IMG/VR virus record: IMGVR_UViG_3300032053_000002
Coordinates: 124,001-188,000 of that record
Strand: one strand, 5' to 3'
Length of the DNA: 64,000 nucleotides
Shown here: piece after piece, positions 8,505 to 56,895 of the stretch
How positions within the stretch are numbered: the stretch's first letter is position 1
Layout of the letters: every line of letters begins with the position of its first letter
Translations under genes and position numbers: made by a program
The notes under the pieces: model-generated
Databases searched by the model: none
Told to the model about the DNA's origin: nothing
What the model saw: the letters and a program-made list of their open reading frames with translations, nothing else

Positions 8505-8580
8505 TGGGGTGCACGGTGAGATTCGAACTCACGCTCCGCGGGTCACAGCCGCGTAATGCTACCGCTACATCACGCGCACC
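8505..8580 (-). tRNA. tRNA-His (GUG)
   Basis: Cloverleaf: G-1, acceptor GTGCGCG/CGTGCAC, anticodon arm CGCGG-CT GTG AC-CCGCG, TTCGAAT loop, C73 and encoded CCA. Confidence 0.95.
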
Positions 8581-42688: not shown

Positions 42689-43433
42689 TTCTCCACTTTA
42701 TAAGTTTCTGAATGTCTTCTTCTATTCTCTGTTTACCTTCCCCGTGATCTAACCAGTACTTAGCAGGGACTTTTACTTTTGTAGAATATCCTCCAGCACC
42801 ATCGTCGGGTAATCCAAAAATTAATTTTTTCGCTCCACCATCATCATAATAATCCATTTCGCCTTTTCCTCTTTGTAAGTGGAGCATTTTCATATTAGCA
42901 TTTAATGGAAGAATACCCGCGCCAATTCCCACCAATTTTAAATAGCCATCCGTTGCTCTACTTCCACTAACCCTTCCAATGATTTCGTACCATTTTCTAT
43001 TTATTCCAACAAAAGTCGGAGTCCCCTTCCAAATTTCGTTTAGCGGAACGCTCGCAATCCAAAATGGCTGCCCTTTGACCGGAGCAACAGCGTTTCTAAG
43101 ATTGGTATCCCACCCCCCTTCTATACAAATTAGATCGTCGTTAAAAATAAATAAACATTCTCCGGTAAACAATTCTCCCGCCTTATTTTGGTATTGTTCT
43201 AATTCCCCGTACCCGTATCGTTTGTCCATAACAAAACAAAACAATTGCGCATCATTCGCATAACACATTGGCGAAATTTTAGTCAACGCGTCTTCGGTTT
43301 CCTTATCGTCGGGGTCTAATGCAAAAAAATACTCGATATTTTTATTATCATCCGCATTTTGAATAAATGACGAAAGAGAATATACCAATTCGTGCGAACG
43401 TTTTCTTGTTATCCACACCACACTAATTTTCAT
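42666..43433 (-). CDS. GT2-like glycosyltransferase
   Basis: ISVVWITRKR, ALDPDD, FIFNDD. Confidence 0.65.
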   Translation of the reverse strand: MKISVVWITRKRSHELVYSLSSFIQNADDNKNIEYFFALDPDDKETEDALTKISPMCYANDAQLFCFVMDKRYGYGELEQYQNKAGELFTGECLFIFNDDLICIEGGWDTNLRNAVAPVKGQPFWIASVPLNEIWKGTPTFVGINRKWYEIIGRVSGSRATDGYLKLVGIGAGILPLNANMKMLHLQRGKGEMDYYDDGGAKKLIFGLPDDGAGGYSTKVKVPAKYWLDHGEGKQRIEEDIQKLIKWRNENGHRK

Positions 43434-43434
43434 T

Positions 43435-44418
43435 TTATCTCCAATATTGATATAATCCTTTTTCTATTTCGTAGTTTTCCCATTTATATACTGGGCGATT
43501 TGGTTGTATTTTGGCCCACTCCCACATTTTTTCCAACCCCTCTTTCAATCCAATCTTATGTTCGAACCCGAGAAAATCAATAGATTTTTGATAAGTCGAA
43601 AACGCATTTTGAACTTCGTGACGACACTCAAGAAATTTCATTTCACCTTTACCGGCAACATCAATTAAAGTTTTAGCCGCATCAAGAATAGTAATTGACT
43701 CAAATCCTCCAAGATTTATAATTTCATCAGTCGATTTTTTGTCGATAGCATTCCACAAAGGTTCTAAAATATCGTCGACAAAAGTGAATGCTCGGCGTTG
43801 TTCACCGTTACCGTATATAGAAATCGGTTCATTATTTAAAATTTGTCTTACCCAAATTCCGAGAACATTCCGATATTTATCCCATATATTTTGGTTAATA
43901 CCATAAACATTATGAGGGCGAATAATCGTATACTCTAACCCATGTTGGGCGTACGCCACTTGTAAGTCTAATTCACACGCAAGTTTTGAAATGCCGTACG
44001 GGTCGATTGGTTTTGGAACATCACGCTCATCAAATGGCACTTCGCCGTGTCCATATACAGCTAAAGAAGATGTGAAAATAAACTTCTTAACGTTATATTT
44101 AATCGCCATATTGATCAATCGTACTGTCGCAATTAAATTTGTTTCATAATTAAAGTGCCGTATAAATGGCGACAATCCTTCGGCAGCATATGCGGCGAAA
44201 TGATATACATAATCAATTTTATGGTTTATAAAGATATTTTCAACATTGTCGTGAACCAGATTCATTTTTTGAAAATAAACACCCTGAGGAATATGTTCCA
44301 AATATCCGCCGCTTAAATCATCGATTCCGATAATCATAACATCTTTTTTATTTTCAAGAACCCAGTGACAAAATCGCGACCCGATCATTCCTGCGCATCC
44401 CGTTACTAAAATTATCAT
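43435..44418 (-). CDS. NAD-dependent sugar epimerase/dehydratase (GalE-like SDR)
   Basis: TGCAGMIG, HFAAYA, YGISK, RPHNVYG; start set at MIILV. Confidence 0.85.
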   Translation of the reverse strand: MIILVTGCAGMIGSRFCHWVLENKKDVMIIGIDDLSGGYLEHIPQGVYFQKMNLVHDNVENIFINHKIDYVYHFAAYAAEGLSPFIRHFNYETNLIATVRLINMAIKYNVKKFIFTSSLAVYGHGEVPFDERDVPKPIDPYGISKLACELDLQVAYAQHGLEYTIIRPHNVYGINQNIWDKYRNVLGIWVRQILNNEPISIYGNGEQRRAFTFVDDILEPLWNAIDKKSTDEIINLGGFESITILDAAKTLIDVAGKGEMKFLECRHEVQNAFSTYQKSIDFLGFEHKIGLKEGLEKMWEWAKIQPNRPVYKWENYEIEKGLYQYWR

Positions 44419-44434
44419 GTACTTCTCCTTAAAT

Positions 44435-45424
44435 TTATAATACACCTCTCCAATATTCCAGCAAATCATCACAGATATGAGTTAAACTCTTTTTAGGTTT
44501 CCAACCAAACTCATTTCTAAACTTTGAGCTGTCGGGAATCTGTAAAGTAATATCAGTTGGTCTAATTCTGTCGGGATTTAGTTGTTTGTAAAAAGCGTCT
44601 GGATATTTAGACATGGAAATTAGCATATCTAAAGCATCGCCAACAGTACAAGTATAATCCCCTCCGATATTGTATACTTCGCCAAACTTTTTTGCAGAAG
44701 AACATAACCAATATGCTTCAACCGCATCTTCAATATGATTATACGTCCTAACGGAGTTTAAGTTCCCGTGCTCTATTGAATATAATCCGATTGGAAAATC
44801 TTTTGATTTTTCATGCGCGACTATTTGATGCGCAAAAGAAGATAGTGCGAATTGTTTGCTGCGTCTTGCTCCCTCGTGACTAAACATTCTCGTAATAATA
44901 ACCTTCATGCCATACGCCGAATGATAATATTGTGACATCAAATCATGCCCGACTTTGGAAATTGAATAAGGATTCGCCGCTCGAATCGGATTTTTTTCTG
45001 TAATCGGAACTTCGTCTTTGGTAGGATTTCCATAGACTTCAGAAGAAGATACACTAACTATTATTGGATTACACCATCCCGCTTCTTTAAAGTTTTTTAG
45101 TTCTTCCATAAGATTTGTCGTACCAAGCACATTTGTTGTCAAAGTCATTATCGGAGTTAAGAAACTCGTTTCAGGAAAACTTTGCGCGGCAAAATGATAA
45201 ACAATATCTGGTAAAGATGCTTTAATAGCTCTAAATAAACTTCCTCTGTCTGTTAAGTCGGCTTCGAGAAACTTTACTCTCATATCAGAATAGAAATGTT
45301 TTATATTATCATCTCTACTTCTCCATCGTCTTATCGCATATATTTGTATATTTTCTTTTTTCAGAAGATAGTCCACCATGTGACTACCGACAAATCCCGT
45401 GCAACCTGTAAGTAAAACTTTCAT
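44435..45424 (-). CDS. GDP-mannose 4,6-dehydratase / Rmd-like SDR
   Basis: TGCTGFVG, HFAAQSF, SSSEVYG, NPYSISK, FSHEG. Confidence 0.8.
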   Translation of the reverse strand: MKVLLTGCTGFVGSHMVDYLLKKENIQIYAIRRWRSRDDNIKHFYSDMRVKFLEADLTDRGSLFRAIKASLPDIVYHFAAQSFPETSFLTPIMTLTTNVLGTTNLMEELKNFKEAGWCNPIIVSVSSSEVYGNPTKDEVPITEKNPIRAANPYSISKVGHDLMSQYYHSAYGMKVIITRMFSHEGARRSKQFALSSFAHQIVAHEKSKDFPIGLYSIEHGNLNSVRTYNHIEDAVEAYWLCSSAKKFGEVYNIGGDYTCTVGDALDMLISMSKYPDAFYKQLNPDRIRPTDITLQIPDSSKFRNEFGWKPKKSLTHICDDLLEYWRGVL

Positions 45425-45624
45425 AAACTTTCTCCCGTTTTTATATCATATACCGGCAACTTGCTCGTATGTTTTTTCTCATACGCATAAATAAACGCGG
45501 ACGAACTTTTGCGATATATATTCTGCGAACGACAATTTGGGCATTCAATAAAAGATTCATAATCCGTATCAACCCATTGTGTATCGCAATCTTCACACCA
45601 CATTTCTTCAACATTTGTATTCAT
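45421..45624 (-). CDS. Zinc-ribbon protein
   Basis: CEDC...CPNC. Confidence 0.65.
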   Translation of the reverse strand: MNTNVEEMWCEDCDTQWVDTDYESFIECPNCRSQNIYRKSSSAFIYAYEKKHTSKLPVYDIKTGESL

Positions 45625-46570
45625 TTTTATACCATTTCAGAGTTTTCTTTATTCCTTCGTCTATACCGGTTTTCGCCGACCAGCCTAATAAATCTTTCGC
45701 CTTTGAGCAATCTAAATATAAAGATGTTGGAATTGTTGGTTTTGATAGATCATGCGTTACCTTTAATTGTTTCCCAGAGTGTTGAATTATTTTATTTACC
45801 AGGTCTATTATTTTAACAGCTTTACCCACCCCAACATTAAATAGTTCATAATTAGATTTTTGGTTTTCTAGCGACAAATCTATAAAATCTATTAAATCGT
45901 CTACATATAATAAATCTCTCGCCTCTTCACCGGTTCCCCAAACAACCAACTCTCCAGTTTTATTTGTCATTACTTTAGTAATTGTGGCGCCGAAAACATG
46001 GCTTTTTTCTAAATCATATTTATCGTACGGCCCGTACACATTCGAATGGCGAATTACTGTATGTTTGGTTCTTCCCAACCTCGAATAAAACTCACACATT
46101 TTTTCAATATAAACTTTTGTATTGCCTACACCAAAATAAGTTTTGTATATCTCGTCGTTACCGTTAAAATCCGTTTCCTTTAATGCTTTATCAGATGGTT
46201 GATACATAACAGTGCAACTTGGAAATATAATATGTTCTATCTTTTGTTCGTAGCATTCTCTTAAAATATAACTATTCATGACCGCATTATCAGTAACGTG
46301 AACGTATGGTTGATTGACTATATCGTTAGCACCAGACGTTGTTGCGGCGAACTGAAGTACAATATCAACATCTTTCAGTGCGTCTTTAACATCTACGGGA
46401 TTTCTCAAATCGCACCAAACCCATTCAGCATTTCGATATTCTCTCGCCAAAAATAATGACCACACGGAAAGAAATGGTATTCTAATTTTGTATTTTCCAC
46501 TTTTGTAATAATGATTTAATAAATTTCTGCCTATAAAACCAGATGCTCCGCAAATTAAAATTCTTTTCAT
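45608..46570 (-). CDS. NAD-dependent sugar epimerase/reductase (SDR)
   Basis: GASGFIG, FAATTSG, FGVGNTK, RHSNVYGP. Confidence 0.85.
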   Translation of the reverse strand: MKRILICGASGFIGRNLLNHYYKSGKYKIRIPFLSVWSLFLAREYRNAEWVWCDLRNPVDVKDALKDVDIVLQFAATTSGANDIVNQPYVHVTDNAVMNSYILRECYEQKIEHIIFPSCTVMYQPSDKALKETDFNGNDEIYKTYFGVGNTKVYIEKMCEFYSRLGRTKHTVIRHSNVYGPYDKYDLEKSHVFGATITKVMTNKTGELVVWGTGEEARDLLYVDDLIDFIDLSLENQKSNYELFNVGVGKAVKIIDLVNKIIQHSGKQLKVTHDLSKPTIPTSLYLDCSKAKDLLGWSAKTGIDEGIKKTLKWYKNEYKC

Positions 46571-46571
46571 T

Positions 46572-46757
46572 TTAACCCCTTCTCATTAAAAATCGTTTTG
46601 ACACGATTGCTACAATTGCCAATGTTAATGTTATTAAAAAAGAAATACTCATAACGTATATTATTGAATGAGTACCTTTTCCAGATAAGCAAACCAGAAA
46701 ATAGTATACCCACGTTCCGACCACAACAAGAGTAAAATTTTTCCAACTCGGTTTCAT
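46572..46757 (-). CDS. Small 2-TM membrane protein
   Basis: Two hydrophobic segments. Confidence 0.55.
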   Translation of the reverse strand: MKPSWKNFTLVVVGTWVYYFLVCLSGKGTHSIIYVMSISFLITLTLAIVAIVSKRFLMRRG

Positions 46758-46760
46758 TTT

Positions 46761-47450
46761 TTAACTTCCTCCCAAATAATCATCAATTGCTTGCCATGAT
46801 GTTTTTCCTGTATAAATTGGATTTGGAAATGTTTCTGGAGTAATATATGTAAAGTCGCCAAATTCAACATCGAAACCATAGTGATATTTAATATCTTTCA
46901 ATTTAACATTTCCCGTAGTAACAAAATCATAAATTCCCTGTAAATCGTAACATTGTTCGCTCATAAAAAATTTCAAAAGATAATCATAGCAAACATAATT
47001 AAAGGTCGATTCTTCAGATAAAGTTATTTTTTCTCCTATAATCATTTTCGTGAAATGATTTTCTCTCATTCCTTTGCCAATTAATGCTGAACATCTCAAT
47101 ATCAATGAATTTGGGTATTGTTTAACAATCGATTCGGTGAATCTTTTAAACATACTGTAAAGATTTTCTTGTAAAGCGAACCAATATACATCAATAGATG
47201 AAATATAAATAAACTTACCATACTTCATGTTTAGCAATCTTTGGGTTAGTAAAATGTTATCATCGATATATTTGTAGTAGTCAGTTATTTTTTTTTCCTT
47301 ATTGAAAGCACAATGAATAACAGTATCATATTCTTTATTTTTTATGTCGTCAAAATTATGTCTATTCAATCCAACAGAGTTATTTAAATTTTCATATAAA
47401 TATTTACCTAGACCGCTACCAACACCTGTAATCAAATATTTCTTTATCAT
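46761..47450 (-). CDS. Short NAD-dependent epimerase/reductase (SDR)
   Basis: LITGVGSGLG, IHCAFN, YSMFK; start set at MIKKY. Confidence 0.75.
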   Translation of the reverse strand: MIKKYLITGVGSGLGKYLYENLNNSVGLNRHNFDDIKNKEYDTVIHCAFNKEKKITDYYKYIDDNILLTQRLLNMKYGKFIYISSIDVYWFALQENLYSMFKRFTESIVKQYPNSLILRCSALIGKGMRENHFTKMIIGEKITLSEESTFNYVCYDYLLKFFMSEQCYDLQGIYDFVTTGNVKLKDIKYHYGFDVEFGDFTYITPETFPNPIYTGKTSWQAIDDYLGGS

Positions 47451-47558
47451 TTTAATTTCCTTTCTTTTGGTAAGAAAGGGTACGCTCCAATTTTCCACCA
47501 TATAAACACCGCTATTAAAAATAGAGAAATCCAAAACACTAAAAATACAATATTCATA

Positions 47559-48554
47559 TTATTTAACTCCCTTCTTAAAAGCATTATATCTTTTATCAAC
47601 AATATCTTTATTTTCTAAATACCATTTTATTGTATCTTTTATGCCTTCTTCAATTGAAATAAATGGCTCGAATCCATATGAACGAATGCGACCTGTATCG
47701 AATAGTCTTTCTAAATCTCCGGTAGGCTTGTCGCTCAACCATTTTATCGGTTTGTTAAATTCTTTCGCCACAATCTCGGCGACTTCCTTAATCGCTACCC
47801 CAAATCCACTTCCCAGATTAACTGGTTGAGTTATACCGCTTTCAACTGCTAATATCATTCCCCTGGCGACATCATCGGCGTGTATAAAATCTCTAATGGG
47901 GCTTCCGTCTCCCCAAACTTCCAACATATCATTTTCATCGGCTTTTCGTATTAGTGAAGGTATAACCATAGCATTTTCTGGATCGAAGTTATCATATCGC
48001 CCATAAACATTCGCGGGTCTGACAATAGATACTTTATTCCAATTATATTGTATGGAATATGCTTCCGCTTGTAACTCTCCCATCCGTTTCGCCCAACCTG
48101 CAAACCTATCATTAGGCGATGGAAATGTTTTCCACACATCGTCTTCTCTAAATAACTTAGCAGGAGAATACACACCAACAGAACTTGTATACAGATACCA
48201 TTCTACATCTGCAAGTCTCGCCGCTTCCATCATGTTTGTGTTGAATTGCAGCATGGGAACAAAAAAACTTGCGGGTTGTTCCGCACACATTTTCGGAGAA
48301 CCTTTTACGCCAACTAAATTAAATACGTAATCCATTCTTTCGCAAATAGCGCGGCAATCTTCAAAATTTCTTAAATCGGCATAAACGTATACGGCATCCA
48401 ACCCTTCAGGATATGTCAAATCCGCCACTTCCACATCCGCTCCGCAAATCTTTAACCTCTCGACCAATGAGCGGCCTATCATTCCACTACCACCAGTAAC
48501 TAAAACTTTTTTATTTTCTAAATTATTTTGTAGCATAACATTCTCCATACTCAA
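47559..48554 (-). CDS. NAD-dependent sugar epimerase/reductase (SDR)
   Basis: TGGSGMIG, YTSSVGVY, AGWAKRMGE, RPANVYG. Confidence 0.85.
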   Translation of the reverse strand: MSMENVMLQNNLENKKVLVTGGSGMIGRSLVERLKICGADVEVADLTYPEGLDAVYVYADLRNFEDCRAICERMDYVFNLVGVKGSPKMCAEQPASFFVPMLQFNTNMMEAARLADVEWYLYTSSVGVYSPAKLFREDDVWKTFPSPNDRFAGWAKRMGELQAEAYSIQYNWNKVSIVRPANVYGRYDNFDPENAMVIPSLIRKADENDMLEVWGDGSPIRDFIHADDVARGMILAVESGITQPVNLGSGFGVAIKEVAEIVAKEFNKPIKWLSDKPTGDLERLFDTGRIRSYGFEPFISIEEGIKDTIKWYLENKDIVDKRYNAFKKGVK

Positions 48555-49059
48555 TTAATAATGTTGATATAAAATCATTTCTATTATATGCAAATTCAAA
48601 TGCTGGAAATATCTGTTCAGCTGAATTTAATATTACTATATTAATTTCGTTTAACATATGTACGAACGCGGAAGTATGATTCTGGGTATGTTGAACTCCG
48701 GCGTCTAACGGTGTTTTCGACCCGACCGAAGTTCGTATAATAACTCTTGGCAATTTTTCCCCTTTTGACATTTCTCGCATTTTATCAAGATGATTTACTA
48801 ACTGATTGCATGCAAGAATTAGAAAATCAAATCGGGGGTAACAAGTTATCGGAACAAATCCTTCCAACGCAAGTCCTGTGGATATACCCATTTGTAATTC
48901 TTCAGCAACAGGCATCTCATATCGTTTTTCTTTTGGTACACGTTCCATTGTACCAGACATAGCATGACCACTATATACAATTGCTTGCCCAATAAAAATA
49001 GTATTTGGTTTTTCTGCTAGCCATTCCATTGCCTTAATTAATTCTTCTCTGTATTTCAT
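48523..49059 (-). CDS. TPP-dependent E1-beta-like subunit, pyrimidine-binding domain only
   Basis: MPVAEELQMGISTGLALEG, QLVNHLDK; 178 aa. Confidence 0.8.
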   Translation of the reverse strand: MKYREELIKAMEWLAEKPNTIFIGQAIVYSGHAMSGTMERVPKEKRYEMPVAEELQMGISTGLALEGFVPITCYPRFDFLILACNQLVNHLDKMREMSKGEKLPRVIIRTSVGSKTPLDAGVQHTQNHTSAFVHMLNEINIVILNSAEQIFPAFEFAYNRNDFISTLLIEYGECYATK

Positions 49060-49072
49060 AAGTTTTTCGCCT

Positions 49073-49699
49073 TTAAAAATTTAAAAATTTGCCAGTTCCG
49101 TGGTGAGGATACTCTAATTTGTATGAATACGTAATAATATCACTGTAAAAAGGACTTGGGATGCCCCACGCAATATTAGTTGGCGTATGAACGCTCATAC
49201 CGTTGTCCTCGACAACAAATTGAATGGGCAAATTGAAATTTTTTGAATACTTATGGCTTTCGTGAAATATTCCCGTTTCATAAGTCATATCGCCAATAAA
49301 GCACCACACTTTTCTTTCAGATTGTTTAAATTTTAGCGCCAGTGCAACACCAACCGCTATTGGTATTATTCCACCAACAATTGAAGATGCATAAAAGTTT
49401 TTATAACTGGTACTCATACTTCTACCATTTAATATGTCTTGAAACAAAATATCTGGCGACATCCCATGTAATAATGCATGATAGTGATTTCTCCACGTAG
49501 AAAACACCCAATCGTCCGGATGAACATATTGAAAAATTTCCATTAGTTCATCTTCATTTCCTTTTGATAAATGAATCGCGGCTTTTATTTTTCCGTCGTT
49601 ATAATATTCGGCAACCGCCGTTTCAAAGTCAATAAGTTCTTGTTTAGTAATTGTAATATCTCTAATTTTTTTAAGATTTTTTGGAATGTGTATATCCAT
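49073..49699 (-). CDS. TPP-dependent E1-alpha-like subunit (short)
   Basis: HLSKGNE, STWRNHYH, IVGGIIP.AVG, GD...ETG...EDN TPP motif; 208 aa. Confidence 0.8.
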   Translation of the reverse strand: MDIHIPKNLKKIRDITITKQELIDFETAVAEYYNDGKIKAAIHLSKGNEDELMEIFQYVHPDDWVFSTWRNHYHALLHGMSPDILFQDILNGRSMSTSYKNFYASSIVGGIIPIAVGVALALKFKQSERKVWCFIGDMTYETGIFHESHKYSKNFNLPIQFVVEDNGMSVHTPTNIAWGIPSPFYSDIITYSYKLEYPHHGTGKFLNF

Positions 49700-49700
49700 A

Positions 49701-50477
49701 TTATACGTCCCTCAATAAATTTTTAATTTTGCTTCCTGAACGCACCCAAACACTTCTCGAAGGCTTTCCAACTACCGCATCTACCATCGAACCCAATTCT
49801 ATGCAATGTATATTCTTATTTAAATTCCACAATCTCTTTGTAATAACTCGCCCCGCCATACCTGCAGTAGGTAAAACCAATTCAACATCATCGACATACT
49901 TTAATACTTCAGGCCACCACTCGTCCATAGAATAATATGCTCCCGAAAATACTTTCTGTTCTTCTACTTTTGCGCAAGGAATTTTAACATAATAATCTAT
50001 TTTACCTACTAATTTTTCGATTTCGTTTTTATCTACACTTCCTATAAAAAGTTTTTTCTTTGGACGTATAAAAACATCTAGAAAATTCATCATTATATCT
50101 TGTTGGCACACGGCTAAATAAGTTAATAAAACGTGAGAATCGAAAGTTATTTCTTCTCTTTCGCCATCATAAAGACGCTCAATAAGATCTAATATTTGTT
50201 TATTGCGAGCCGAATTTACGGGTTGCAAACTAAAACCATTAAACGTAGGCTCGTTTACCATAACACCTTTAATATAATTCGGAGCGTCAATCATAAACGC
50301 GCCAACCAATTCTTTTTGAAGTTCGGGTGACGCGGCGTGTTCTATACACCTTCCCGTACCAAACATAATATTTAAATCGCCGTCACCAAATCTGCAATAG
50401 TATACTTTAGTATTCGTACTCAACAAATTATACAATTTGTTAAGCGTTGTTTGTATGTCATTGGTTTTTATTATCAT
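49701..50477 (-). CDS. GT-D-fold-like glycosyltransferase
   Basis: YCRFGDGD motif. Confidence 0.55.
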   Translation of the reverse strand: MIIKTNDIQTTLNKLYNLLSTNTKVYYCRFGDGDLNIMFGTGRCIEHAASPELQKELVGAFMIDAPNYIKGVMVNEPTFNGFSLQPVNSARNKQILDLIERLYDGEREEITFDSHVLLTYLAVCQQDIMMNFLDVFIRPKKKLFIGSVDKNEIEKLVGKIDYYVKIPCAKVEEQKVFSGAYYSMDEWWPEVLKYVDDVELVLPTAGMAGRVITKRLWNLNKNIHCIELGSMVDAVVGKPSRSVWVRSGSKIKNLLRDV

Positions 50478-50478
50478 T

Positions 50479-51441
50479 CTATTCTCCTCGAATATAAAGA
50501 AGATCGTCGCCTTCTTTACCTTTTATTCCTAACTGATAATTATGTTCTAACATATATGTATGAAAATCGTTAACCTGCGTTGGCGAAAGAATTAATGGAT
50601 GTTGTTCCGCAAAAATAACTTTTGGTCTTATATTTTTTAGCCCTTTTATTACGTTTAATTCCAACCCCTCCACGTCAATATGAAGCAAATCAATTTCCGT
50701 AATGTTGTTTTCTTGACAATATGTGTGCAAAGAAATTGTTTTTATTTTTATGGGATCCGAAAATATAATTCTATAATCCCCATCTTTCGCTCTCGATTCA
50801 ATAAATGTTCCGCTCCCGCAAATTACTTGCCGCCCCGATGCAACTTTAGCTGAATAAAAATTGCGCTCACCATCTTCGTCCGATACTCCAATATTTGAAA
50901 GGATGATGCCTTCATCTTTCATATAATCTTTAATTTTATCATTGATTCCAGGATCCGCTTCAAATGCATGCACTTGCGCGTTTTTCCACTTACGTTTGAA
51001 TCGTATTGAATCTCCACCATTATTGCACCCGACATCAAAAATTACTTTAGGAATTATTTCCAGTTCGTCTATCCAATTTAAATTAAATGCGCTATAGTTA
51101 AGATAGAGAATCGTTTCTTTTCCGAATTCATTTATTGTGGTTTTATAAAAATTCTCGGTTTCTCCGGGTAAATAATCGGATTTTATCTTTTTATTTACGA
51201 TTGTAGGCATTGCCGTCACCCGCGCATTTTCTTCTTTCAATTCTTTATATTTGGATTTTATTTCATCATATAATTTTTCCAATCGAATCTTTTCTTCTTT
51301 CAACTCTTTATATCTCGTTTCTATCTGGTCGAGCGTTTTTTTCAAATAGTCAATTGTTTTTTGAACGTCGATAATTTGAAATTTAGTCTGGCCCAATTGA
51401 AACGCCAGATTTTCATATAAGACTTTAATGGAATCAGGCAT
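50479..51441 (-). CDS. FkbM-family methyltransferase with N-terminal coiled coil
   Basis: FDVGCNNG, AFEADP, HIDVEGLE; repeated YKELKEE heptads. Confidence 0.85.
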   Translation of the reverse strand: MPDSIKVLYENLAFQLGQTKFQIIDVQKTIDYLKKTLDQIETRYKELKEEKIRLEKLYDEIKSKYKELKEENARVTAMPTIVNKKIKSDYLPGETENFYKTTINEFGKETILYLNYSAFNLNWIDELEIIPKVIFDVGCNNGGDSIRFKRKWKNAQVHAFEADPGINDKIKDYMKDEGIILSNIGVSDEDGERNFYSAKVASGRQVICGSGTFIESRAKDGDYRIIFSDPIKIKTISLHTYCQENNITEIDLLHIDVEGLELNVIKGLKNIRPKVIFAEQHPLILSPTQVNDFHTYMLEHNYQLGIKGKEGDDLLYIRGE

Positions 51442-52837
51442 AATTTACATCTCTTTTATATAGTTCTTTATTATTCATCATTTTTTCAAATACGTCTAAA
51501 TTTTTTATTGGCGCCAAATCATACGCTAATTTCTGATATTTTCTAAGTGTTTCTATGCTCATTCTTTCACTTTCCATAACTATCCCGTGTTGTTTTCCGT
51601 ACTCATCCCAATCATTAGATAATATTTTTAATCCATATTCTCCTTTAGTTGCCCACTCTCTCAATATTGTCCCTGGAAATGGAACCGCTATTGGGTATGT
51701 TAGGGAATATACTTTTGGATATAAAAGTTTGGAAAATTCTATAATTTCTTTCGCCGTTTCTTCGGTTTCCCCCGCCAAATTAAAGATAAAACTTCCCGCC
51801 GTAATAATTCCCGCATCCCACGCAGCATCCACCGCACTTTTTATTTGCCATTTTGTTTTAATTCCCTTACCCACTCTCGCAAGCATATCTTCATTCGCAG
51901 CTTCAAATCCGAAAAATATGTAATAACATCCTGCTTCCCTCATCAATTTGTAAAACGAAAGGTCGTCTATATGAACCGTCGTTTCGCAAGACCATTTTAT
52001 TTTTTTGGAGATTCCGGTCTCTATCATTTTTTTAAATAATTGTTCAGACCAATTTTTATTAACTACAAAAGATTCATCTAAAAAAACTATTGCCTCTACA
52101 CCAAAATCTCTGTGATTTCTTTCCATTTCATATATAATACTATCGATTGAACGATAAGTACGTTTCTTTCCAAAAGGTCTGGCGCAGAAATGACAATTGT
52201 ACGGACACCCTCTGCTTGTGCTCATGGGAAGTTCCCGAGATGTTCGGTGTGGGTCGCCTCCCATATATTTATTTAAATCCGCAAAATCTTCCCACGCGGG
52301 TGATGGTAAGTCATCTAACACCGTCACTCTTAGCGAATCGGACGGGGAAAAGGATTCCGCCGTATAAATTCCCGGAACTTTATTTGGAGTATTTAAATTT
52401 TCAAATATCAAAGGCAGAAGTGTATCAGCTTCACCTTTGACTGAAAAATCAAAGACCGGAAATTCTTTTAATGTCTCCACCGGCATAGCGGATGCATGAG
52501 AACCGCCAACGCATATTTTTATTTGCGGAAATTCGTTTTTAATATGTTGCGCAATCTTGGCAGCAGTTTTAATTTGCACAGTGAATGCGGTGAATCCTAT
52601 CAATAATGGTTGTTCTTTTTTTATAATATCAATCAATTCTGGTATATTAACATTTTCCGTTACCAAATTAACAACCTTTGACTTTATATTATATTTTTTA
52701 GCGGATGCCTGTAAATATGCCAATCCAATGTTTGGCACATTTCCAGTAGATAAGTTTTTTAATACTTGTTCTTTTTTAAATTTATCAACCATTCTAGGAT
52801 CAAACTGCGTATCAATTAATAATAAATCTAAACTCAT
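51434..52837 (-). CDS. B12-binding radical SAM enzyme (class B methylase-like)
   Basis: PNIGLAYL, VGGSHAS, SRGCPYNCHFC, FLDESF. Confidence 0.9.
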   Translation of the reverse strand: MSLDLLLIDTQFDPRMVDKFKKEQVLKNLSTGNVPNIGLAYLQASAKKYNIKSKVVNLVTENVNIPELIDIIKKEQPLLIGFTAFTVQIKTAAKIAQHIKNEFPQIKICVGGSHASAMPVETLKEFPVFDFSVKGEADTLLPLIFENLNTPNKVPGIYTAESFSPSDSLRVTVLDDLPSPAWEDFADLNKYMGGDPHRTSRELPMSTSRGCPYNCHFCARPFGKKRTYRSIDSIIYEMERNHRDFGVEAIVFLDESFVVNKNWSEQLFKKMIETGISKKIKWSCETTVHIDDLSFYKLMREAGCYYIFFGFEAANEDMLARVGKGIKTKWQIKSAVDAAWDAGIITAGSFIFNLAGETEETAKEIIEFSKLLYPKVYSLTYPIAVPFPGTILREWATKGEYGLKILSNDWDEYGKQHGIVMESERMSIETLRKYQKLAYDLAPIKNLDVFEKMMNNKELYKRDVNYA

Positions 52838-53532
52838 AATAGATTACTCATTTTTGTTATATTCATAGAAATATCTTCGGAATCAATAAACTTTCTGTTC
52901 TTATGTATAGGTAAAACTTTTGGATTGGTTTTCTTTGCCATATCATAAACCGTTTTTAACTCTGTTCCGATATTATATATTCCGATTGCATCCTTCTTTA
53001 TTACTTTTATCATCAACTTTGCTATCACATCAACATAATCGAAATTTCCAACTAAATCAATCCATGCGCTATCGTAAGGAAATGGTATCGGTTTAAAAGA
53101 AGATCTTAATATTAAGTATTTGTTCGACTTTGCAACTATATATGCATCGGCTAATAACTTTGTATAAGTATACCAATTATCATAATGAATAGGAATATCT
53201 TCTTCTGTCGCCATCTTTTTTGAATTCGCATAAACATAATCCGTGCTGATATGAACTAATTTTATATTTAACTTGTTGCATAATTCTACCAAATCAATCA
53301 CCGCAACATAATTTGTATTCCAGTGCATATTTCTTGTGTTATCCAACGTGTTCGTATACGCAATGCAATTTATCAATTCTTTCGGGTTGTATTTTAACAA
53401 TAAAGGATAATAACTATTGCTATCAATAAAATCAAATTTATCTTTTAGGCGACTTATACAATTCCATCTTGTCAAGTTAATAATTTTACTTCCTAAAAGT
53501 CCATCACCTAAAATTAATCTTTTCGGTTTCAT
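52834..53532 (-). CDS. rfbD: dTDP-4-dehydrorhamnose reductase-like
   Basis: LGDGLLG, INCIAYT, HISTDYVY, YTYTK. Confidence 0.75.
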   Translation of the reverse strand: MKPKRLILGDGLLGSKIINLTRWNCISRLKDKFDFIDSNSYYPLLLKYNPKELINCIAYTNTLDNTRNMHWNTNYVAVIDLVELCNKLNIKLVHISTDYVYANSKKMATEEDIPIHYDNWYTYTKLLADAYIVAKSNKYLILRSSFKPIPFPYDSAWIDLVGNFDYVDVIAKLMIKVIKKDAIGIYNIGTELKTVYDMAKKTNPKVLPIHKNRKFIDSEDISMNITKMSNLL

Positions 53533-54836
53533 TGAGAAAATTCCTTAACTATTTTTTTAATATAATTTATTGTTTTTTTATTGTATTGCGGGGAACATCC
53601 AACAAAAAATACTCTTTTCAACACTTTATTTGCATTTTCATATTCTTTCCAATCGCCTAAATGTTTATATGCTGGATGAATTAAAATGTTTCCTGCAAAA
53701 TAATTTCTAGTTTGAATTCCGCTTTTTTCCAAATATTCGACCAATAAATATTTCATTTCTTCATTATCGCATATTAGCGGAACTCCAAACCAACAAACGT
53801 CCGATAGAGAAAGAACATCTACTCCCCGTAAACCGATTATATTCGATAAAAATATTTCTTCTATTTCATTTTTATATTTTATTCTTTTTTTATGTATTTC
53901 GCCAAATTTTTGTAGTTGAACCAACCCAATCGCGCCTTGTAAATCTAACGGTTTTAAATTATACCCAACATTGGTAAATATGTATTTGTGGTCGAGTATT
54001 CCATCGTGTTCAGGTATCCATTTATCAAATCTATGTTTGCAGGTTCCGCCGGGTAACAAATTTGCAGCTCCAACACAATAACAATCCCTTCCCCACCATG
54101 CCATACTTCTGGCGATTTTTATTATTTCCGAATTATTGGAACAAATCATTCCACCTTCTCCGGTTGTAATGTGGTGCGCGGGATAAAATGAAAATGAACT
54201 CGCAATCGCAAAATTATGCAAATACTCACCATTCCACTTTGTCCCTAAGCTATCACAACTATCTAATATTAATTCTATTTTATGTTCGTTTGATAAATTC
54301 ACTAAACAATCCATATCCGGCGGATTTCCGAGAACGGGAGATATGAATATTGCGCGTGTTCTTTCTGTTATTTTATTTTTTATTTCGGCGACATCAAAAT
54401 TAAGAGTGCCGAATTCAATATCCACGAAAACCGGTTTTAAATTGTTAAGCGTTATTGCAGATAATGTTGTCGGAAATCCAACTACTGATACTATAATCTC
54501 ATCCCCATCACTCCATTTTAAATATTTTTTTAACGCGGCTATCATCAACAAATTGGCCGAACTTCCAGAATTCACCATTACAGAACTTGTTATGCTAAAC
54601 ATTTTTGAAAAGGTTATTTCAAATTTGTGGACATATTCTCCTCCAGAAAACCATTTTCCGAAAATCAATGATTCCATTATTGCCAATATTTCTTTTTTAT
54701 CAAAATACGGACCGGAATAAAAAACTCTATTCTCAAATTTTTTATTGTTGTAAACAAACTTTGGAAATTGACCAAAACTTTTTGTCAGTTTATTTATTAT
54801 GCCATGAAGTTTTTTCTTATTTTTTTCCGTAATCAT
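53529..54836 (-). CDS. rfbH: CDP-4-keto-6-deoxyglucose 3-dehydratase E1 (RfbH/DdhC)
   Basis: SFYPAHHITTGEGG, WGRDCYC...C..RF Fe-S motif, DHKY...GYNLK. Confidence 0.9.
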   Translation of the reverse strand: MITEKNKKKLHGIINKLTKSFGQFPKFVYNNKKFENRVFYSGPYFDKKEILAIMESLIFGKWFSGGEYVHKFEITFSKMFSITSSVMVNSGSSANLLMIAALKKYLKWSDGDEIIVSVVGFPTTLSAITLNNLKPVFVDIEFGTLNFDVAEIKNKITERTRAIFISPVLGNPPDMDCLVNLSNEHKIELILDSCDSLGTKWNGEYLHNFAIASSFSFYPAHHITTGEGGMICSNNSEIIKIARSMAWWGRDCYCVGAANLLPGGTCKHRFDKWIPEHDGILDHKYIFTNVGYNLKPLDLQGAIGLVQLQKFGEIHKKRIKYKNEIEEIFLSNIIGLRGVDVLSLSDVCWFGVPLICDNEEMKYLLVEYLEKSGIQTRNYFAGNILIHPAYKHLGDWKEYENANKVLKRVFFVGCSPQYNKKTINYIKKIVKEFSQ

Positions 54837-54861: not shown

Positions 54862-55908
54862 TTATTCAGTACCAATTCCATCTAATTCTTTTAATAAATA
54901 ATAGAGATGTTCGGCTCTCTTTTCGGGTTTGTTCTGAGCTTCATATATTTCTTGAAAACGCGTATACATTTTTTTATGAATATCCTGCCATTTAGAAATC
55001 GCAAAATCGAGTTTTTCTTCTAAATTACTCCAGTCCCACTTAACGGAAATATAGGATTCGCCATCGACGTAAGGATTCGGTATGGTTTCAATATGGCTCA
55101 TATCATTTTTAATTAAAATGCTTCCAAACATTGAAGATTCTAAATCACGATGGGTTATTTCACCATAACCCAAAGGCCCAATAACCACTTTTGCGTTTGT
55201 CATTTTTTGATAATATTGGTCTAGTGGCAATCTAACTCCGTTAATCAATTTATTTATGCTATATTTTTTTTCTAATTTTTCTAACTTTTCTATCACCGGT
55301 CGACGAAGTTCATCATAATATTTTGATTGAAGTTCTTCATGTTCATAAACTTCTTTTCCCATTGGATATTGGAACATTGCTGAAATATCAACCGGTTTCG
55401 GATTATTTCTGAACGGCAAATTCCAATTAGGAATTGTGGTCGATAACCAATTAAATCCGGCGAGTTTCATTTTATGTTTCATATCATCTATATCCGGAAC
55501 CGAATATTTTCCTTCGCCCCAATATATTCTTCCAGTATTCCACCCCCTTTTATACAGATCAAAATCTTTAAGATACGTGGGTTTAAGAAATAGTCGGCAT
55601 CGTTTATCTTTATAGACGTGTCTAAAGACATCAACGGTTCCTATTAGTGTCGTGGCGTCTTGCCCATCAACGATTATGTAGTCGCCAGTAATGGAATCGA
55701 GTTTTTTCAACCCCATTTCTACCGACTCTTTTAATGATTTTTTCTTGTCGATAATAGACGCCTGTCCAACCATCGCGAAATCGTAAGAAGTCGCGTCGGT
55801 GATTAATTCTATCCCGAGTTGTTTAAGTAAATTTTTAATAAATAAATAAGGTCGATATGTACATTCGTTTCTATGAATATCTGGCTCAAATAACTTTATT
55901 TTAATCAT
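54862..55908 (-). CDS. Putative GT-B glycosyltransferase-like protein
   Basis: C-terminal GYGEI..RD.E...GSILIK...YISVKWDWSNL segment. Confidence 0.55.
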   Translation of the reverse strand: MIKIKLFEPDIHRNECTYRPYLFIKNLLKQLGIELITDATSYDFAMVGQASIIDKKKSLKESVEMGLKKLDSITGDYIIVDGQDATTLIGTVDVFRHVYKDKRCRLFLKPTYLKDFDLYKRGWNTGRIYWGEGKYSVPDIDDMKHKMKLAGFNWLSTTIPNWNLPFRNNPKPVDISAMFQYPMGKEVYEHEELQSKYYDELRRPVIEKLEKLEKKYSINKLINGVRLPLDQYYQKMTNAKVVIGPLGYGEITHRDLESSMFGSILIKNDMSHIETIPNPYVDGESYISVKWDWSNLEEKLDFAISKWQDIHKKMYTRFQEIYEAQNKPEKRAEHLYYLLKELDGIGTE

Positions 55909-55926: not shown

Positions 55927-56895
55927 TCAATATGCCGCATTTTTCCACCAAGCTTCATTTTTAACATACCATCTAATCGTTTGTAATAAACCAACTTCAA
56001 ATTTCCATTTATGCGACCACCCTAACTTTTTCATCTTATCGTATTCTATCGAATACCTAAAGTCGTGACCTGGCCTATCATTCACAAACTCGATCATATC
56101 TTTTGGCTTATTCATATATTCTATAATTAAATTTGCTATTTTTATATTTGTGAATTCTTTTTCTCCACCGATGTTGTAAATATTTCCAGATTCGCCATAA
56201 TTTAATACATATTCTATAGCTCTACAGTTATCTAAAATGAAAATCCAATTTCTAATATTTTCGCCTTTTCCATATATCGGTATGGGTTTATCCTGAATTA
56301 AATTAGTGATTGCTAACGGAATAAATTTTTCTGGATGCTGATAATATCCATAATTATTTGAACTCCTAGTGATTACTACCGGAACACCATAAGTTCGATA
56401 ATATGATAATGCTAACAAATCTGCGGCAGCTTTCGATGCGGCATAAGGATTCCCCGGTTTCAACATTGATTCTTCCGTAAAAGAACCGCTATGAATTTCC
56501 CCGTACACTTCGTCCGTGGATATTTGAATGAACTTTTCTATTTTATATTTTTTCGCCGCTTCCAGTAGGACATACGTTCCAAATAAATTAGTATCCAAAA
56601 ACTGTTTCGCGGAATCTATGGAGCGGTCAACGTGAGTCTCCGCGGCGAAATTTATTATAACATCAACATTTCTCATTAAATTATTAACTACATTTTCGTT
56701 ACAGATGTTCCCGCAATAAAACATAATATTTTTATCGTTTATTATACCGTCTATATTTTTTATATTGCTAGCATAAGTCATTGCATCCAATATTATTATT
56801 TCCTGGTTGTTTTTATCCTGACCATTTTTATTGTGCAAGTATCTGACAAAATTGCTACCAATAAAACCCGCTCCGCCGGTCACCAATATTTTCAT
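55927..56895 (-). CDS. rfbB: dTDP-glucose 4,6-dehydratase
   Basis: TGGAGFIGSN, FAAETHVDRSI, ISTDEVYG, PYAASKA, NNYG.YQHPEK.IP. Confidence 0.95.
   Translation of the reverse strand: MKILVTGGAGFIGSNFVRYLHNKNGQDKNNQEIIILDAMTYASNIKNIDGIINDKNIMFYCGNICNENVVNNLMRNVDVIINFAAETHVDRSIDSAKQFLDTNLFGTYVLLEAAKKYKIEKFIQISTDEVYGEIHSGSFTEESMLKPGNPYAASKAAADLLALSYYRTYGVPVVITRSSNNYGYYQHPEKFIPLAITNLIQDKPIPIYGKGENIRNWIFILDNCRAIEYVLNYGESGNIYNIGGEKEFTNIKIANLIIEYMNKPKDMIEFVNDRPGHDFRYSIEYDKMKKLGWSHKWKFEVGLLQTIRWYVKNEAWWKNAAY

What the first reader, a model, noticed from the sequence alone, without database searches (positions are those of the whole stretch)
45608..54836. Miniature TPP-dependent E1 alpha/beta pair, three SDRs and RfbH: candidate branched-chain 3,6-dideoxysugar pathway
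Seen: alpha (208 aa) and beta (178 aa) are much shorter than pyruvate dehydrogenase subunits, no E2/E3 genes are present, and they are coupled to three SDR genes with RfbH, RmlD-like and RmlB nearby. Known: YerE (TPP) adds a pyruvate-derived two-carbon unit to CDP-4-keto-3,6-dideoxyglucose (the E1/E3 product) to give yersiniose, and AviB1/B2 (E1 alpha/beta-like) are implicated in the branched sugar of avilamycin. Inference: the phage makes a C4-branched octose-type sugar with a minimal TPP enzyme. No E3 reductase or CDP-glucose enzymes are recognisable in the window, so they would come from the host or elsewhere in the genome.
Basis: partly seen in the sequence, partly recalled or inferred. 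Interest (0 to 1): 0.65.

Follow-up and report, generated by a model that had tools for sequence, protein, structure and literature searches.

The report
Phage mini thiamine enzyme in deoxysugar operon
A jumbo phage carries a stripped-down two-subunit thiamine enzyme inside a large sugar-making gene island, and its neighbours in hundreds of other phages suggest it attaches a two-carbon side branch to a deoxysugar, a reaction not yet tested for this enzyme family.

Summary
Two tightly coupled genes encode a 208-aa E1-alpha-like and a 178-aa E1-beta-like protein. They are followed by SDR genes. An RfbH/E1-type 3-dehydratase, a short RmlD-like gene and a true RmlB lie upstream. All of this sits in a >40-kb glycan island of a 293-kb tailed phage.

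The pair keeps the thiamine-diphosphate (ThDP) motifs. It lacks the E1-beta C-terminal domain and much of E1-alpha. The phage has no E2, lipoyl or E3 genes.

The family is overwhelmingly viral: at least 565 IMG/VR loci, against 12 MAG/SAG contigs among 185,579 prokaryote genomes. Natural alpha-beta fusions occur in cyanophages S-SM2 and P-TIM68.

In 88 non-redundant loci:
- 76 have keto-sugar genes on the same strand.
- 49 have a His-type (dehydratase-type) DegT enzyme.
- In about 41 of those 49, that enzyme lies directly after beta.

This supports a branching role like YerE or AviB1/B2, acting on an NDP-4-keto-(3,)6-deoxy sugar.
- The chemistry is untested.
- RfbH is not part of the conserved core in the window's nearest relatives.
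- The nucleotide is more likely dTDP or GDP than CDP.

Divergent relatives sit beside radical-SAM or heptose-type genes. I rate it a new variant of a known kind, of moderate to good interest.

The parts
55927..56895 (-). dTDP-glucose 4,6-dehydratase (RmlB), 322 aa
   Evidence: TIGR01181 424.4 bits, above the 365.1 cutoff; PF16363 228 bits.
54862..55908 (-). Unknown protein, 348 aa, conserved in syntenic relatives
   Evidence: No Pfam or NCBIfam hit. Homologues found in 4 related loci, and L104 carries 348/349-aa genes at the same relative position.
53529..54836 (-). E1/RfbH-type NDP-4-keto-6-deoxyhexose 3-dehydratase, 435 aa
   Evidence: 222 bits to 3BCX. His is kept at the H220 position (motif YPAHH). 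All four Cys aligned with E1 C193/C251/C253/C261 are kept, with 4 extra residues before the last one. NF011936 341 bits, below the 423 cutoff.
52834..53532 (-). Short RmlD-like SDR, 232 aa (N-terminal half only)
   Evidence: PF04321 residues 9-145 match profile positions 7-149 of 287. GxGxxG and YxxxK motifs are present. No homologue in the 88 related loci.
51434..52837 (-). B12-binding radical SAM enzyme, 467 aa (probable methyltransferase class)
   Evidence: PF02310 plus PF04055. Best NCBIfam hits are HpnJ, BchE and PhpK-type, all far below their cutoffs.
50479..51441 (-). FkbM-family methyltransferase, 320 aa
   Evidence: PF05050 5.4e-18; TIGR01444 81.8 bits, above the 37.7 cutoff.
49701..50477 (-). 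GT-D-like glycosyltransferase candidate, 258 aa, directly upstream of alpha
   Evidence: ESM Atlas features 0.95-0.96 and structure TM 0.70-0.79 to GT-D / GT-D-like clusters. 57% identical to the gene directly upstream of alpha in L104.
49073..49699 (-). Mini E1-alpha-like ThDP subunit (PP domain), 208 aa
   Evidence: PF00676, TIGR03182. AF2 pLDDT 91.6. Foldseek to human E1 alpha: E 3e-13, TMq 0.70, TMt 0.41. Invariant G136-D137...E164/N166, plus H43, E49, R70, H72 and H199, across 60 homologues.
48523..49059 (-). Mini E1-beta-like ThDP subunit (Pyr domain only), 178 aa
   Evidence: PF02779. AF2 pLDDT 94.4. Foldseek to E1 beta: TMq 0.87, TMt 0.48. Invariant E53 and Q123-H124 across 49 homologues. 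No Transketolase_C domain.
47559..48554 (-). Fcl/ColC-like extended SDR (331-aa ORF; probable start at the ATG at 48536, giving 325 aa)
   Evidence: PF01370 6.4e-43; GDP-L-fucose-synthase model 148.6 bits, below its cutoff. An Fcl-like SDR lies on the same strand in 72 of 88 loci. Start read from the sequence.
46761..47534 (-). Short SDR-like reductase (257-aa ORF; probable start at M29, position 47450)
   Evidence: Weak PF01370 hit. TGxxxGxG and YxxxK motifs present. Homologues in 31 of 88 loci, and directly after beta in L060.
45608..46570 (-). Extended SDR, 320 aa (Fcl/GalE-like)
   Evidence: PF01370 2.4e-37; Fcl 120 bits and GalE 99 bits, both below cutoffs.
44435..45424 (-). 4,6-dehydratase-like SDR, 329 aa, part of the conserved block
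   Evidence: PF16363 228 bits. dTDP-glucose dehydratase 145.6, LegB 131.5 and Gmd 117 bits, all below cutoffs. A 4,6-dehydratase-like SDR occurs in 67 of 88 loci.
43435..44472 (-). GalE-like SDR, 345 aa
   Evidence: PF01370 3.1e-46; GalE 119.9 bits, below cutoff.
42666..43433 (-). Unknown protein, 255 aa, recurrent near the pair
   Evidence: No family hit. Homologues in 7 of 88 loci. Not a PfkB kinase.
42266..42688 (-). Unknown phage-specific protein, 140 aa, recurrent near the pair
   Evidence: Homologues in 44 of 88 loci. The nearest Atlas clusters are viral, unnamed or carry weak DUF6165. Not a cytidylyltransferase.
41344..42261 (-). Fcl-like SDR, 305 aa
   Evidence: GDP-L-fucose synthase model 205.6 bits, below its cutoff; PF01370 4.8e-45.

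Best explanation
The two genes encode a self-sufficient heteromeric thiamine-diphosphate (ThDP) enzyme reduced to the two cofactor-binding domains of a 2-oxoacid dehydrogenase E1: the PP domain (alpha) and the Pyr domain (beta).

I propose that it decarboxylates pyruvate to hydroxyethyl-ThDP and adds that two-carbon unit to the keto carbon of an NDP-4-keto-6-deoxy or NDP-4-keto-3,6-dideoxy hexose. The acceptor would be made by the neighbouring 4,6-dehydratase-like SDR and a His-type 3-dehydratase: RfbH435 in this window, a ColD-like enzyme in most relatives. One of the adjacent SDRs would then reduce the acetyl branch, as YerF does. The GT-D-like transferase directly upstream is a candidate for installing the branched sugar in a phage-directed glycan.

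Shown:
- Domain identity, and the retained cofactor residues.
- Loss of the E2-docking domain, and absence of E2/E3 genes.
- The viral distribution and the natural alpha-beta fusions.
- The gene neighbourhood.

Inferred:
- The donor, the acceptor, the position of the branch and the fate of the product.
For: - Fold and motifs: alpha and beta model with high confidence and superpose on E1 alpha and E1 beta. The diphosphate/Mg motif (G136-D137...N166), the cofactor-activating Glu (beta E53) and the beta Q123-H124 pair are invariant across 60 and 49 homologues.
- E1 models score far above DXS or transketolase models: 95.9 bits against 23.8 and 22.8.
- No role in a dehydrogenase complex is apparent. 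Beta lacks the C-terminal half of E1 beta (TMt 0.48), and the genome has no E2, lipoyl, Fer2 or FNR domains.
- The subunits work together. Beta follows alpha directly in 68 of 88 loci. Single-chain fusions exist in cyanophages S-SM2 and P-TIM68, in PHROG 34187 and in L099/L101.
- Context in 88 non-redundant loci: RmlC-like cupin in 72 (41 directly upstream), 4,6-dehydratase-like SDR in 67, Fcl-like SDR in 72, His-type DegT in 49 (about 41 directly after beta), Lys-type DegT in only 2.
- The DegT next to beta in L005 is ColD-like: 187 bits to 2GMS, with His at position 188. The window's RfbH435 is E1-type.
- Precedent: E1 alpha/beta-like alphaKADH2 enzymes (aldgamycin, Plm8/Plm9, KbDH-alpha/beta, the last tested in vitro) and YerE add pyruvate-derived C2 units to keto-deoxysugars (PMC12247030, PMC4802897, PMC9306805).
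Against: - No biochemical data exist for any member of this family.
- The alpha/beta complex prediction could not be run, so completeness of the active site at the subunit interface is unverified.
- I could not obtain sequences of the known sugar-branching E1-like enzymes, so there is no phylogenetic link to them.
- Gmd-like, ColD-like and Fcl-like genes alone would already make a colitose-type sugar, so the neighbourhood does not by itself demand a branching step.
- 39 of 88 loci have no His-type DegT within 10 kb.
- In divergent relatives the pair lies beside radical-SAM/SPASM genes or beside heptose-type kinase, adenylyltransferase, SIS and aldolase genes. These contexts could point to another substrate.
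- Whether alpha keeps the active-site loop His of E1 alpha is unresolved.
Confidence: 0.5

Rival explanations
1. The pair acts before nucleotide activation, as a transketolase- or DXS-like carboligase that builds or extends a sugar-phosphate skeleton (heptulose, octulose or a 1-deoxy-ketose). That skeleton is then isomerised, phosphorylated by the PfkB kinase and activated by the HldE-domain-II-like nucleotidyltransferase.
For: - An HldE-domain-I-like PfkB occurs in 42 of 88 loci and an HldE-domain-II-like transferase in 24 of 88.
- The fused cyanophage homologues lie among a carbohydrate kinase, a heptose-1-P adenylyltransferase-like gene, phosphoheptose-isomerase-like genes and a class II aldolase.
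- From my own knowledge, E1-like enzymes that use ketose donors exist in NRPS pathways. E1 alpha/beta fusions next to NRPS genes were seen here.
Against: - The window's phage has no PfkB and no NTP_transferase. Its only cytidylyltransferase-like domain is far away, in an 895-aa protein, yet it keeps the pair.
- E1 models score much higher than transketolase or DXS models.
- The tightest partners are NDP-sugar enzymes: the RmlC-like cupin directly upstream and the ColD-like enzyme directly downstream.
Confidence: 0.17
2. The pair is a ThDP-dependent lyase or decarboxylase acting on a different intermediate. Examples would be cleavage of an alpha-hydroxyketone, decarboxylation of a 2-keto-3-deoxy (ulosonic) acid, or supply of an acyl unit for a step that involves the nearby radical-SAM enzymes.
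For: - NeuB and CMP-sugar-synthetase-type genes lie within 10 kb in several loci.
- Radical-SAM/SPASM or B12-rSAM genes flank the pair in divergent contigs, lie near it in L104/L105, and lie near it in the window.
- The acetoin-cleaving Ao:DCPIP oxidoreductase belongs to the same superfamily (PMC12247030).
Against: - The radical-SAM association is seen in only a minority: 14 of 88 loci have any B12-rSAM hit.
- The nonulosonate genes are separate sub-blocks, not the immediate neighbours.
- I found no precedent for such a reaction in nucleotide-sugar pathways.
Confidence: 0.13
3. It is an ordinary 2-oxoacid dehydrogenase E1 (an auxiliary metabolic gene) that uses the host's E2/E3 to make acetyl-CoA during infection.
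For: The closest sequence and structure matches are PDH and BCKDH E1 subunits.
Against: - Beta lacks the whole C-terminal domain. From my own knowledge, this is the part of heterotetrameric E1 that docks the peripheral-subunit-binding domain of E2, as in PDB 1W85.
- Alpha lacks roughly 130 residues of E1 alpha.
- The pair is embedded in glycan operons in nearly all loci.
- There are no E2, E3 or lipoyl genes.
Confidence: 0.03

Closest known systems
alphaKADH2-type (E1 alpha/beta-like) sugar C2-branching enzymes: AviB1/AviB2, the aldgamycin enzyme, Plm8/Plm9, KbDH-alpha/beta (PMC12247030, PMC4802897)
   Same: - A two-subunit E1-like ThDP enzyme without E2/E3.
- Encoded inside a deoxysugar gene cluster with a 4,6-dehydratase, epimerase and ketoreductases.
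- The proposed donor is pyruvate and the proposed acceptor an NDP-keto-deoxysugar.
   Different: - Those enzymes come from actinomycete antibiotic clusters. This family is phage-borne and marine.
- Each subunit here is cut down to a single domain (208 + 178 aa).
- Sequence relationship to those enzymes was not tested, and no activity is known for this family.
YerE/YerF of the yersiniose A pathway (and ErwE, MygE) (PMC9306805)
   Same: The pathway logic is the same: 4,6-dehydratase, then a PMP/PLP-dependent 3-dehydratase, then a ThDP enzyme acting on the 4-keto-3,6-dideoxy sugar, then a reductase.
   Different: - From the paper and my own knowledge, YerE is a single-chain enzyme of the decarboxylase (acetolactate-synthase-like) superfamily.
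- The pair here matches E1_dh and Transket_pyr instead.
- The resemblance is therefore one of analogy, not membership.
2-oxoacid dehydrogenase E1 alpha2beta2 (PDH, BCKDH, acetoin dehydrogenase)
   Same: The same PP and Pyr folds, the same ThDP/Mg motif, and the same activating Glu and beta His.
   Different: - No beta C-terminal domain.
- Alpha is truncated after the last strand of the PP domain, with shorter loops.
- No E2/E3 partners, and a glycan-operon context.
Small two-subunit ThDP decarboxylases of the decarboxylase superfamily (sulfopyruvate decarboxylase ComD/ComE, named from my own knowledge; AzcB/AzcC, PDB 9U8Q)
   Same: The same minimal architecture: one PP-domain subunit plus one Pyr-domain subunit of roughly 170-200 aa each. 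9U8Q appears among the fold hits for beta.
   Different: - A different superfamily.
- The match to 9U8Q is weak (E 2.4e-6, 13% identity), whereas the matches to E1 beta are strong.

Membership tests
2-oxoacid dehydrogenase complex E1 (alpha/beta type) | Alpha PP domain with the GDG...NN-type ThDP/Mg motif | tested here: met
   G136-D137 and E164/N166 are invariant. PF00676 3.3e-16. Fold match to E1 alpha.
2-oxoacid dehydrogenase complex E1 (alpha/beta type) | Beta Pyr domain with the cofactor-activating Glu | tested here: met
   E53 is invariant and aligns with the Glu of a Burkholderia PdhB. TMq 0.87 to E1 beta.
2-oxoacid dehydrogenase complex E1 (alpha/beta type) | Beta C-terminal (Transketolase_C) domain that docks E2 | tested here: not met
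   Beta is 178 aa and covers only about half of E1 beta (TMt 0.48). No PF02780 hit. The alignment ends where the PdhB C-terminal half begins.
2-oxoacid dehydrogenase complex E1 (alpha/beta type) | Full-length alpha (about 330-400 aa) with its C-terminal region | tested here: not met
   Alpha is 208 aa, and E1_dh profile positions 6-170 of 300 are matched. TMt 0.41. Alignment to a 340-aa PdhA.
2-oxoacid dehydrogenase complex E1 (alpha/beta type) | E2 and E3 / lipoyl partners | tested here: not met
   PF00198 and PF00364 are absent from the whole phage record. Host partners cannot be excluded.
alphaKADH2-type sugar C2-branching enzymes | E1-like alpha/beta pair encoded within an NDP-deoxysugar cluster, without E2 | tested here: met
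   76 of 88 loci have a 4,6-dehydratase-like, RmlC-like or His-type DegT gene on the same strand within 10 kb.
alphaKADH2-type sugar C2-branching enzymes | Sequence clade shared with AviB1/B2, Plm8/9 and KbDH | not tested
   No reference sequences could be obtained. The Streptomyces plasmid hits were NRPS-linked fusions, not sugar-cluster enzymes.
alphaKADH2-type sugar C2-branching enzymes | Pyruvate-dependent C2 transfer to a keto-sugar | not testable with these tools
   Needs an enzyme assay.
YerE-type ThDP enzymes (decarboxylase superfamily) | Single chain with TPP_enzyme_N / _M / _C domains | tested here: not met
   The best Pfam hits are E1_dh and Transket_pyr. TPP_enzyme_C gives only 22 bits over about 65 residues around the shared ThDP motif.
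Transketolase / DXS | Best match to transketolase or DXS models | tested here: not met
   DXS 23.8 bits and transketolase 22.8 bits, against PDH E1 alpha 95.9 bits.
E1/RfbH (AscC) 3-dehydratase (for the gene at 53529-54836) | His replaces the PLP-binding Lys | tested here: met
   The YPAHH motif aligns with E1 H220. The H220K variant 3BB8 shows K at that position.
E1/RfbH (AscC) 3-dehydratase (for the gene at 53529-54836) | Four Cys of the [2Fe-2S] motif (C193, C251, C253, C261). Their role as ligands is from my own knowledge. | tested here: met
   All four aligned positions are Cys, with 4 extra residues before the last one.
E1/RfbH (AscC) 3-dehydratase (for the gene at 53529-54836) | NCBIfam equivalog score | tested here: not met
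   340.8 bits, below the 423 cutoff. It is a relative, not an equivalog.

The most novel reading that the evidence does not exclude
The mini alpha/beta pair defines a phage-specific class of minimal ThDP carboligase: PP plus Pyr domains only, about 386 aa in total. It would make C-branched higher sugars, built on 3,6-dideoxy-hexose or even heptose, that have not yet been seen in any characterised glycan. Given its abundance in ocean viromes, it could be one of the commonest sugar-branching enzymes in nature.
Probability: 0.35. Interest if true: 0.75.

Novelty: new variant of a known kind. Interest (0 to 1): 0.6.

Why it matters
- Phage biology: if the function holds, many marine phages, including cultured cyanophages that carry the fused form, encode a route to branched-chain deoxysugars. 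That chemistry is so far known from a few bacterial O-antigens and from actinomycete antibiotics. It would bear on how phages remodel host surfaces or decorate virions.
- Enzymology: the pair would be the smallest E1-type ThDP enzyme. That makes it attractive as a compact carboligase for tertiary alcohols, and as a natural experiment in what an E1 needs once freed from its complex.
- Annotation: it gives a testable function to a large unannotated viral family, currently labelled 'transketolase central region-containing protein' or PHROG 34187 'unknown function'.

Tried and rejected
- The idea that the window's 255-aa and 140-aa genes are the PfkB kinase and cytidylyltransferase of the conserved module was rejected: no similarity, and the genome has no PfkB.
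- An RmlC-like cupin was looked for in the phage because 72 of 88 relatives have one. None was found.
- megablast of the region against isolated phages found nothing.
- I tried to find reference sugar-branching E1-like enzymes on Streptomyces plasmids. The hits were NRPS-linked alpha/beta fusions.
- The avilamycin paper PMC544256 is not held.
- Literature searches for phage branched sugars or for the cyanophage gene name returned nothing.
- Adding a full-length PdhA to the alpha alignment did not settle whether the invariant C-terminal YPHHGTG motif corresponds to the E1 alpha loop His.
- The large representative-protein search, sequencing-run search and read mapping were not used. No claim here rests on absence of relatives or on expression.


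Full report
**Setting**

The window is bases 124001-188000 of a 292,723-bp IMG/VR virus record estimated 91% complete. The record encodes a phage major head protein (phrog_138, 228 bits) and a phage-type helicase. It is therefore a jumbo tailed phage.

Nearly all genes lie on the minus strand. From about 20.9 kb to the right end, the window is one long glycan-biosynthesis island. It holds:
- at least eight glycosyltransferase-like genes;
- a carbamoyltransferase;
- two B12-binding radical-SAM enzymes;
- methyltransferases;
- a true Gmd and a true RmlB;
- a PseB-like dehydratase;
- many SDRs.

**Check of the observation**

- Alpha (49073-49699, 208 aa) matches E1_dh and PDH E1 alpha models.
- Beta (48523-49059, 178 aa) matches Transket_pyr and E1 beta models.
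- Three SDR genes follow, and three more lie further downstream.
- Upstream lie a GT-D-like transferase, an FkbM methyltransferase, a B12-rSAM enzyme, a half-length RmlD-like SDR, an RfbH-like gene, an unknown gene and RmlB.

The phage record has no E2, lipoyl, Fer2, FNR-type, NTP_transferase or PfkB domains.

Gene spacing indicates an operon. There is 1 nt between the GT-D-like gene and alpha, and 13 nt between alpha and beta. The next SDR probably starts at the ATG at 48536, which overlaps the end of beta by 14 nt.

**What the pair is**

AlphaFold2 models built on 60 and 49 homologues are confident: pLDDT 91.6 for alpha and 94.4 for beta.
- Alpha superposes on the human and bacterial E1 alpha PP domain (E 3e-13, TMq 0.70) but covers only about 41% of the target.
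- Beta superposes on E1 beta (TMq 0.87) and covers about half of it, namely the Pyr domain.

Residues invariant across the family:
- in alpha, G136-D137 and E164/N166 of the diphosphate/Mg motif, plus H43, E49, R70, H72 and a C-terminal H199;
- in beta, E53 and Q123-H124.

In an alignment with a full-length Burkholderia PdhA/PdhB pair, beta E53 aligns with the cofactor-activating Glu and Q123-H124 with the conserved Gln-His of E1 beta. Both mini subunits stop where the extra E1 parts begin. From my own knowledge, the missing beta domain is the one that docks E2 in heterotetrameric E1 (PDB 1W85). Whether the invariant YPHHGTG tail of alpha replaces the E1 alpha active-site loop His is unresolved.

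E1 models outscore DXS and transketolase models fourfold.

**Distribution**

The word-based protein search found 3523 relatives. The 120 best are 206-243 aa long, 61-93% identical, and mostly from marine metagenomes.

A pattern scan of IMG/VR gave at least 565 confirmed viral loci. The same kind of scan of one genome from each of 185,579 prokaryote species gave 12 loci. All were MAG or single-cell contigs, including Pelagibacteraceae and Prochlorococcus single cells.

Single-chain alpha-beta fusions of about 380-400 aa occur in:
- Synechococcus phage S-SM2;
- Prochlorococcus phage P-TIM68;
- a 735-kb uncultured phage;
- loci L099 and L101.

These fusions define PHROG 34187, 'unknown function'. 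The fusions, together with the adjacency of beta to alpha in 68 of 88 loci, are the evidence that the two proteins act as one enzyme. The complex prediction could not be run.

**Neighbourhood statistics**

I translated all ORFs of 94 loci and searched them with the window's proteins and with the module proteins of locus L005. I then reduced the set to 88 loci with distinct alpha sequences.

| Neighbour on the same strand, within 10 kb | Loci (of 88) |
|---|---|
| RmlC-like cupin (TIGR01221-like) | 72, of which 41 end just before alpha |
| 4,6-dehydratase-like SDR | 67 |
| Fcl-like SDR | 72 |
| Short SDR-like protein | 31 |
| Window's unknown 140-aa protein | 44 |
| HldE-domain-I-like kinase | 42 |
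| HldE-domain-II-like nucleotidyltransferase | 24 |
| DegT-family enzyme with His at the Schiff-base Lys position | 49 (Lys in only 2 loci) |
| None of the nucleotide-sugar genes searched for | 9 (short contigs or divergent lineages) |

About 41 of the His-type DegT genes start 1.1-1.2 kb after the alpha start, which is directly after beta.

The commonest order is: RmlC-like, alpha, beta, ColD-like, Fcl-like SDR, short SDR, SDR, Gmd-like SDR, kinase, nucleotidyltransferase.

**The 3-dehydratases**

- The DegT next to beta in L005 is closest to ColD (2GMS, 187 bits) and keeps His188.
- The window's RfbH435 is closest to the Yersinia E1 dehydrase (3BCX, 222 bits). It keeps His220 and all four Cys aligned with C193, C251, C253 and C261.
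- From my own knowledge, those Cys bind a [2Fe-2S] cluster that needs an external reductase. None is encoded by the phage, so electrons would come from the host.
- The window also holds a second His-type enzyme (24308-25522) directly downstream of, and overlapping by 4 nt with, a true Gmd (23280-24311). This is a colitose-type pair that should need no reductase.

**How the window compares with its nearest relatives**

In L104 (alpha 74% identical) and L105 the order from the GT-D-like gene through alpha, beta, four SDRs and the 255/140-aa homologues is conserved. L104 has one extra gene after beta, and L105 has two genes between alpha and beta. The RfbH, RmlD-like, B12-rSAM and FkbM genes are missing, and a small SPASM-domain protein sits there instead. 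The RfbH block is thus a variable insertion. It is plausibly a swap for the ColD-like gene that most relatives carry after beta.

**Proposed mechanism**

1. A host nucleotide sugar is used, dTDP-glucose or GDP-mannose. The phage has no nucleotidyltransferase in this island.
2. It is converted to the 4-keto-6-deoxy form by RmlB, by the 4,6-dehydratase-like SDR at 44435-45424, or by Gmd.
3. It is deoxygenated at C3 by RfbH435 or by the ColD-like enzyme.
4. It receives a pyruvate-derived two-carbon unit at the keto carbon from the alpha/beta enzyme.
5. An adjacent SDR reduces the acetyl branch.
6. Methyltransferases may decorate the sugar further, and a glycosyltransferase, perhaps the GT-D-like one, transfers it.

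Only the identities of the parts and their linkage are shown. The reaction, the order of steps and the regiochemistry are inferred by analogy. The analogues are YerE/YerF (PMC9306805) and the E1-like alphaKADH2 branching enzymes of the aldgamycin, paulomycin, avilamycin and kibdelomycin pathways (PMC12247030, PMC4802897).

**Rivals**

- A sugar-phosphate-level transketolase/DXS-like role. This is suggested by the kinase and nucleotidyltransferase genes and by the heptose-type neighbourhood of the cyanophage fusions. It is weakened because this phage keeps the pair without any such kinase.
- A lyase or decarboxylase role on another intermediate, or a link to radical-SAM chemistry. Divergent contigs place the pair beside rSAM/SPASM and glycosyltransferase genes.
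- An ordinary E1 using host E2/E3. This is unlikely given the lost docking domain and the glycan context.

**Comparison with what is known, and novelty**

The pair is not a member of the complex-forming E1 family: three defining features were tested and not met. It is not a YerE-type enzyme either. It works most like the alphaKADH2 sugar-branching enzymes, but membership in their clade was not tested.

I found no paper that mentions this phage family. I file it as a new variant of a known kind: a miniaturised, virus-borne E1-type ThDP enzyme in a deoxysugar pathway.

Noticed in passing
window 20905-64000: A glycan-biosynthesis island of more than 40 kb, all on the minus strand. It holds at least 8 glycosyltransferase-like genes, a carbamoyltransferase (21704-23317), two B12-rSAM enzymes (26219-27484 and 51434-52837), a methyltransferase/GT8-like fusion (38307-39668), a PseB-like dehydratase (33532-34455), and Gmd and RmlB. 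This is unusually large for a phage.
   Followed up: partly
window 23280-25522: A true Gmd (417.6 bits, above the 415 cutoff) lies directly upstream of, and overlaps by 4 nt, a ColD-type DegT with His at the Lys position. This is a second 3,6-dideoxy (colitose-like) route in the same phage, and it could equally feed the ThDP enzyme.
   Followed up: partly
window 35861-36628: A NUMOD3-motif protein (homing-endonuclease-like DNA-binding motif) sits inside the glycan island.
   Followed up: no
L009 (S-SM2 149421-150629) and L010 (P-TIM68 167767-168912): Fused alpha-beta homologues in cultured cyanophages, annotated 'transketolase central region-containing protein'. They sit next to a Zn alcohol dehydrogenase, a PfkB kinase, an HldE-like adenylyltransferase, phosphoheptose-isomerase-like genes and (in S-SM2) a class II aldolase. 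This is a heptose-type context that differs from the window's.
   Followed up: partly
L096, L102, L103 (MAG contigs labelled Woesearchaeota, Nanoarchaeota, Omnitrophota): Divergent mini alpha/beta pairs flanked by radical-SAM/SPASM and B12-rSAM enzymes and a glycosyltransferase, rather than by SDR/DegT genes. L103 also has a reverse transcriptase and a ParB-methylase nearby.
   Followed up: partly
window 42266-42688: A 140-aa protein with no family assignment, conserved in 44 of 88 loci that carry the pair and often just upstream of the RmlC-like gene. Its nearest clusters are viral only. It may be an unrecognised pathway component.
   Followed up: partly
G000 277067-279754 (outside the window; L113:2867-5554): An 895-aa protein with a cytidylyltransferase-like domain (PF01467 32 bits; phrog_395). 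It is the only nucleotidyltransferase-like domain found in the phage among those searched.
   Followed up: no
window 3604-4911 and 30361-31086: An AAA ATPase matching phrog_249 ('porphyrin biosynthesis', CobS-like) and a separate VWA-domain protein. From my own knowledge, this pairing is common in marine phages.
   Followed up: no
window 8505-8579: tRNA-His (GTG) on the minus strand, the only tRNA in the window.
   Followed up: no
L115 and L116 (Streptomyces plasmids): E1 alpha/beta fusion proteins of about 670 aa lie directly upstream of NRPS genes. RenH of the renieramycin symbiont plasmid is also among the hits (H30, H32, H33). These belong to a different, NRPS-linked use of E1-like ThDP enzymes.
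   Followed up: no
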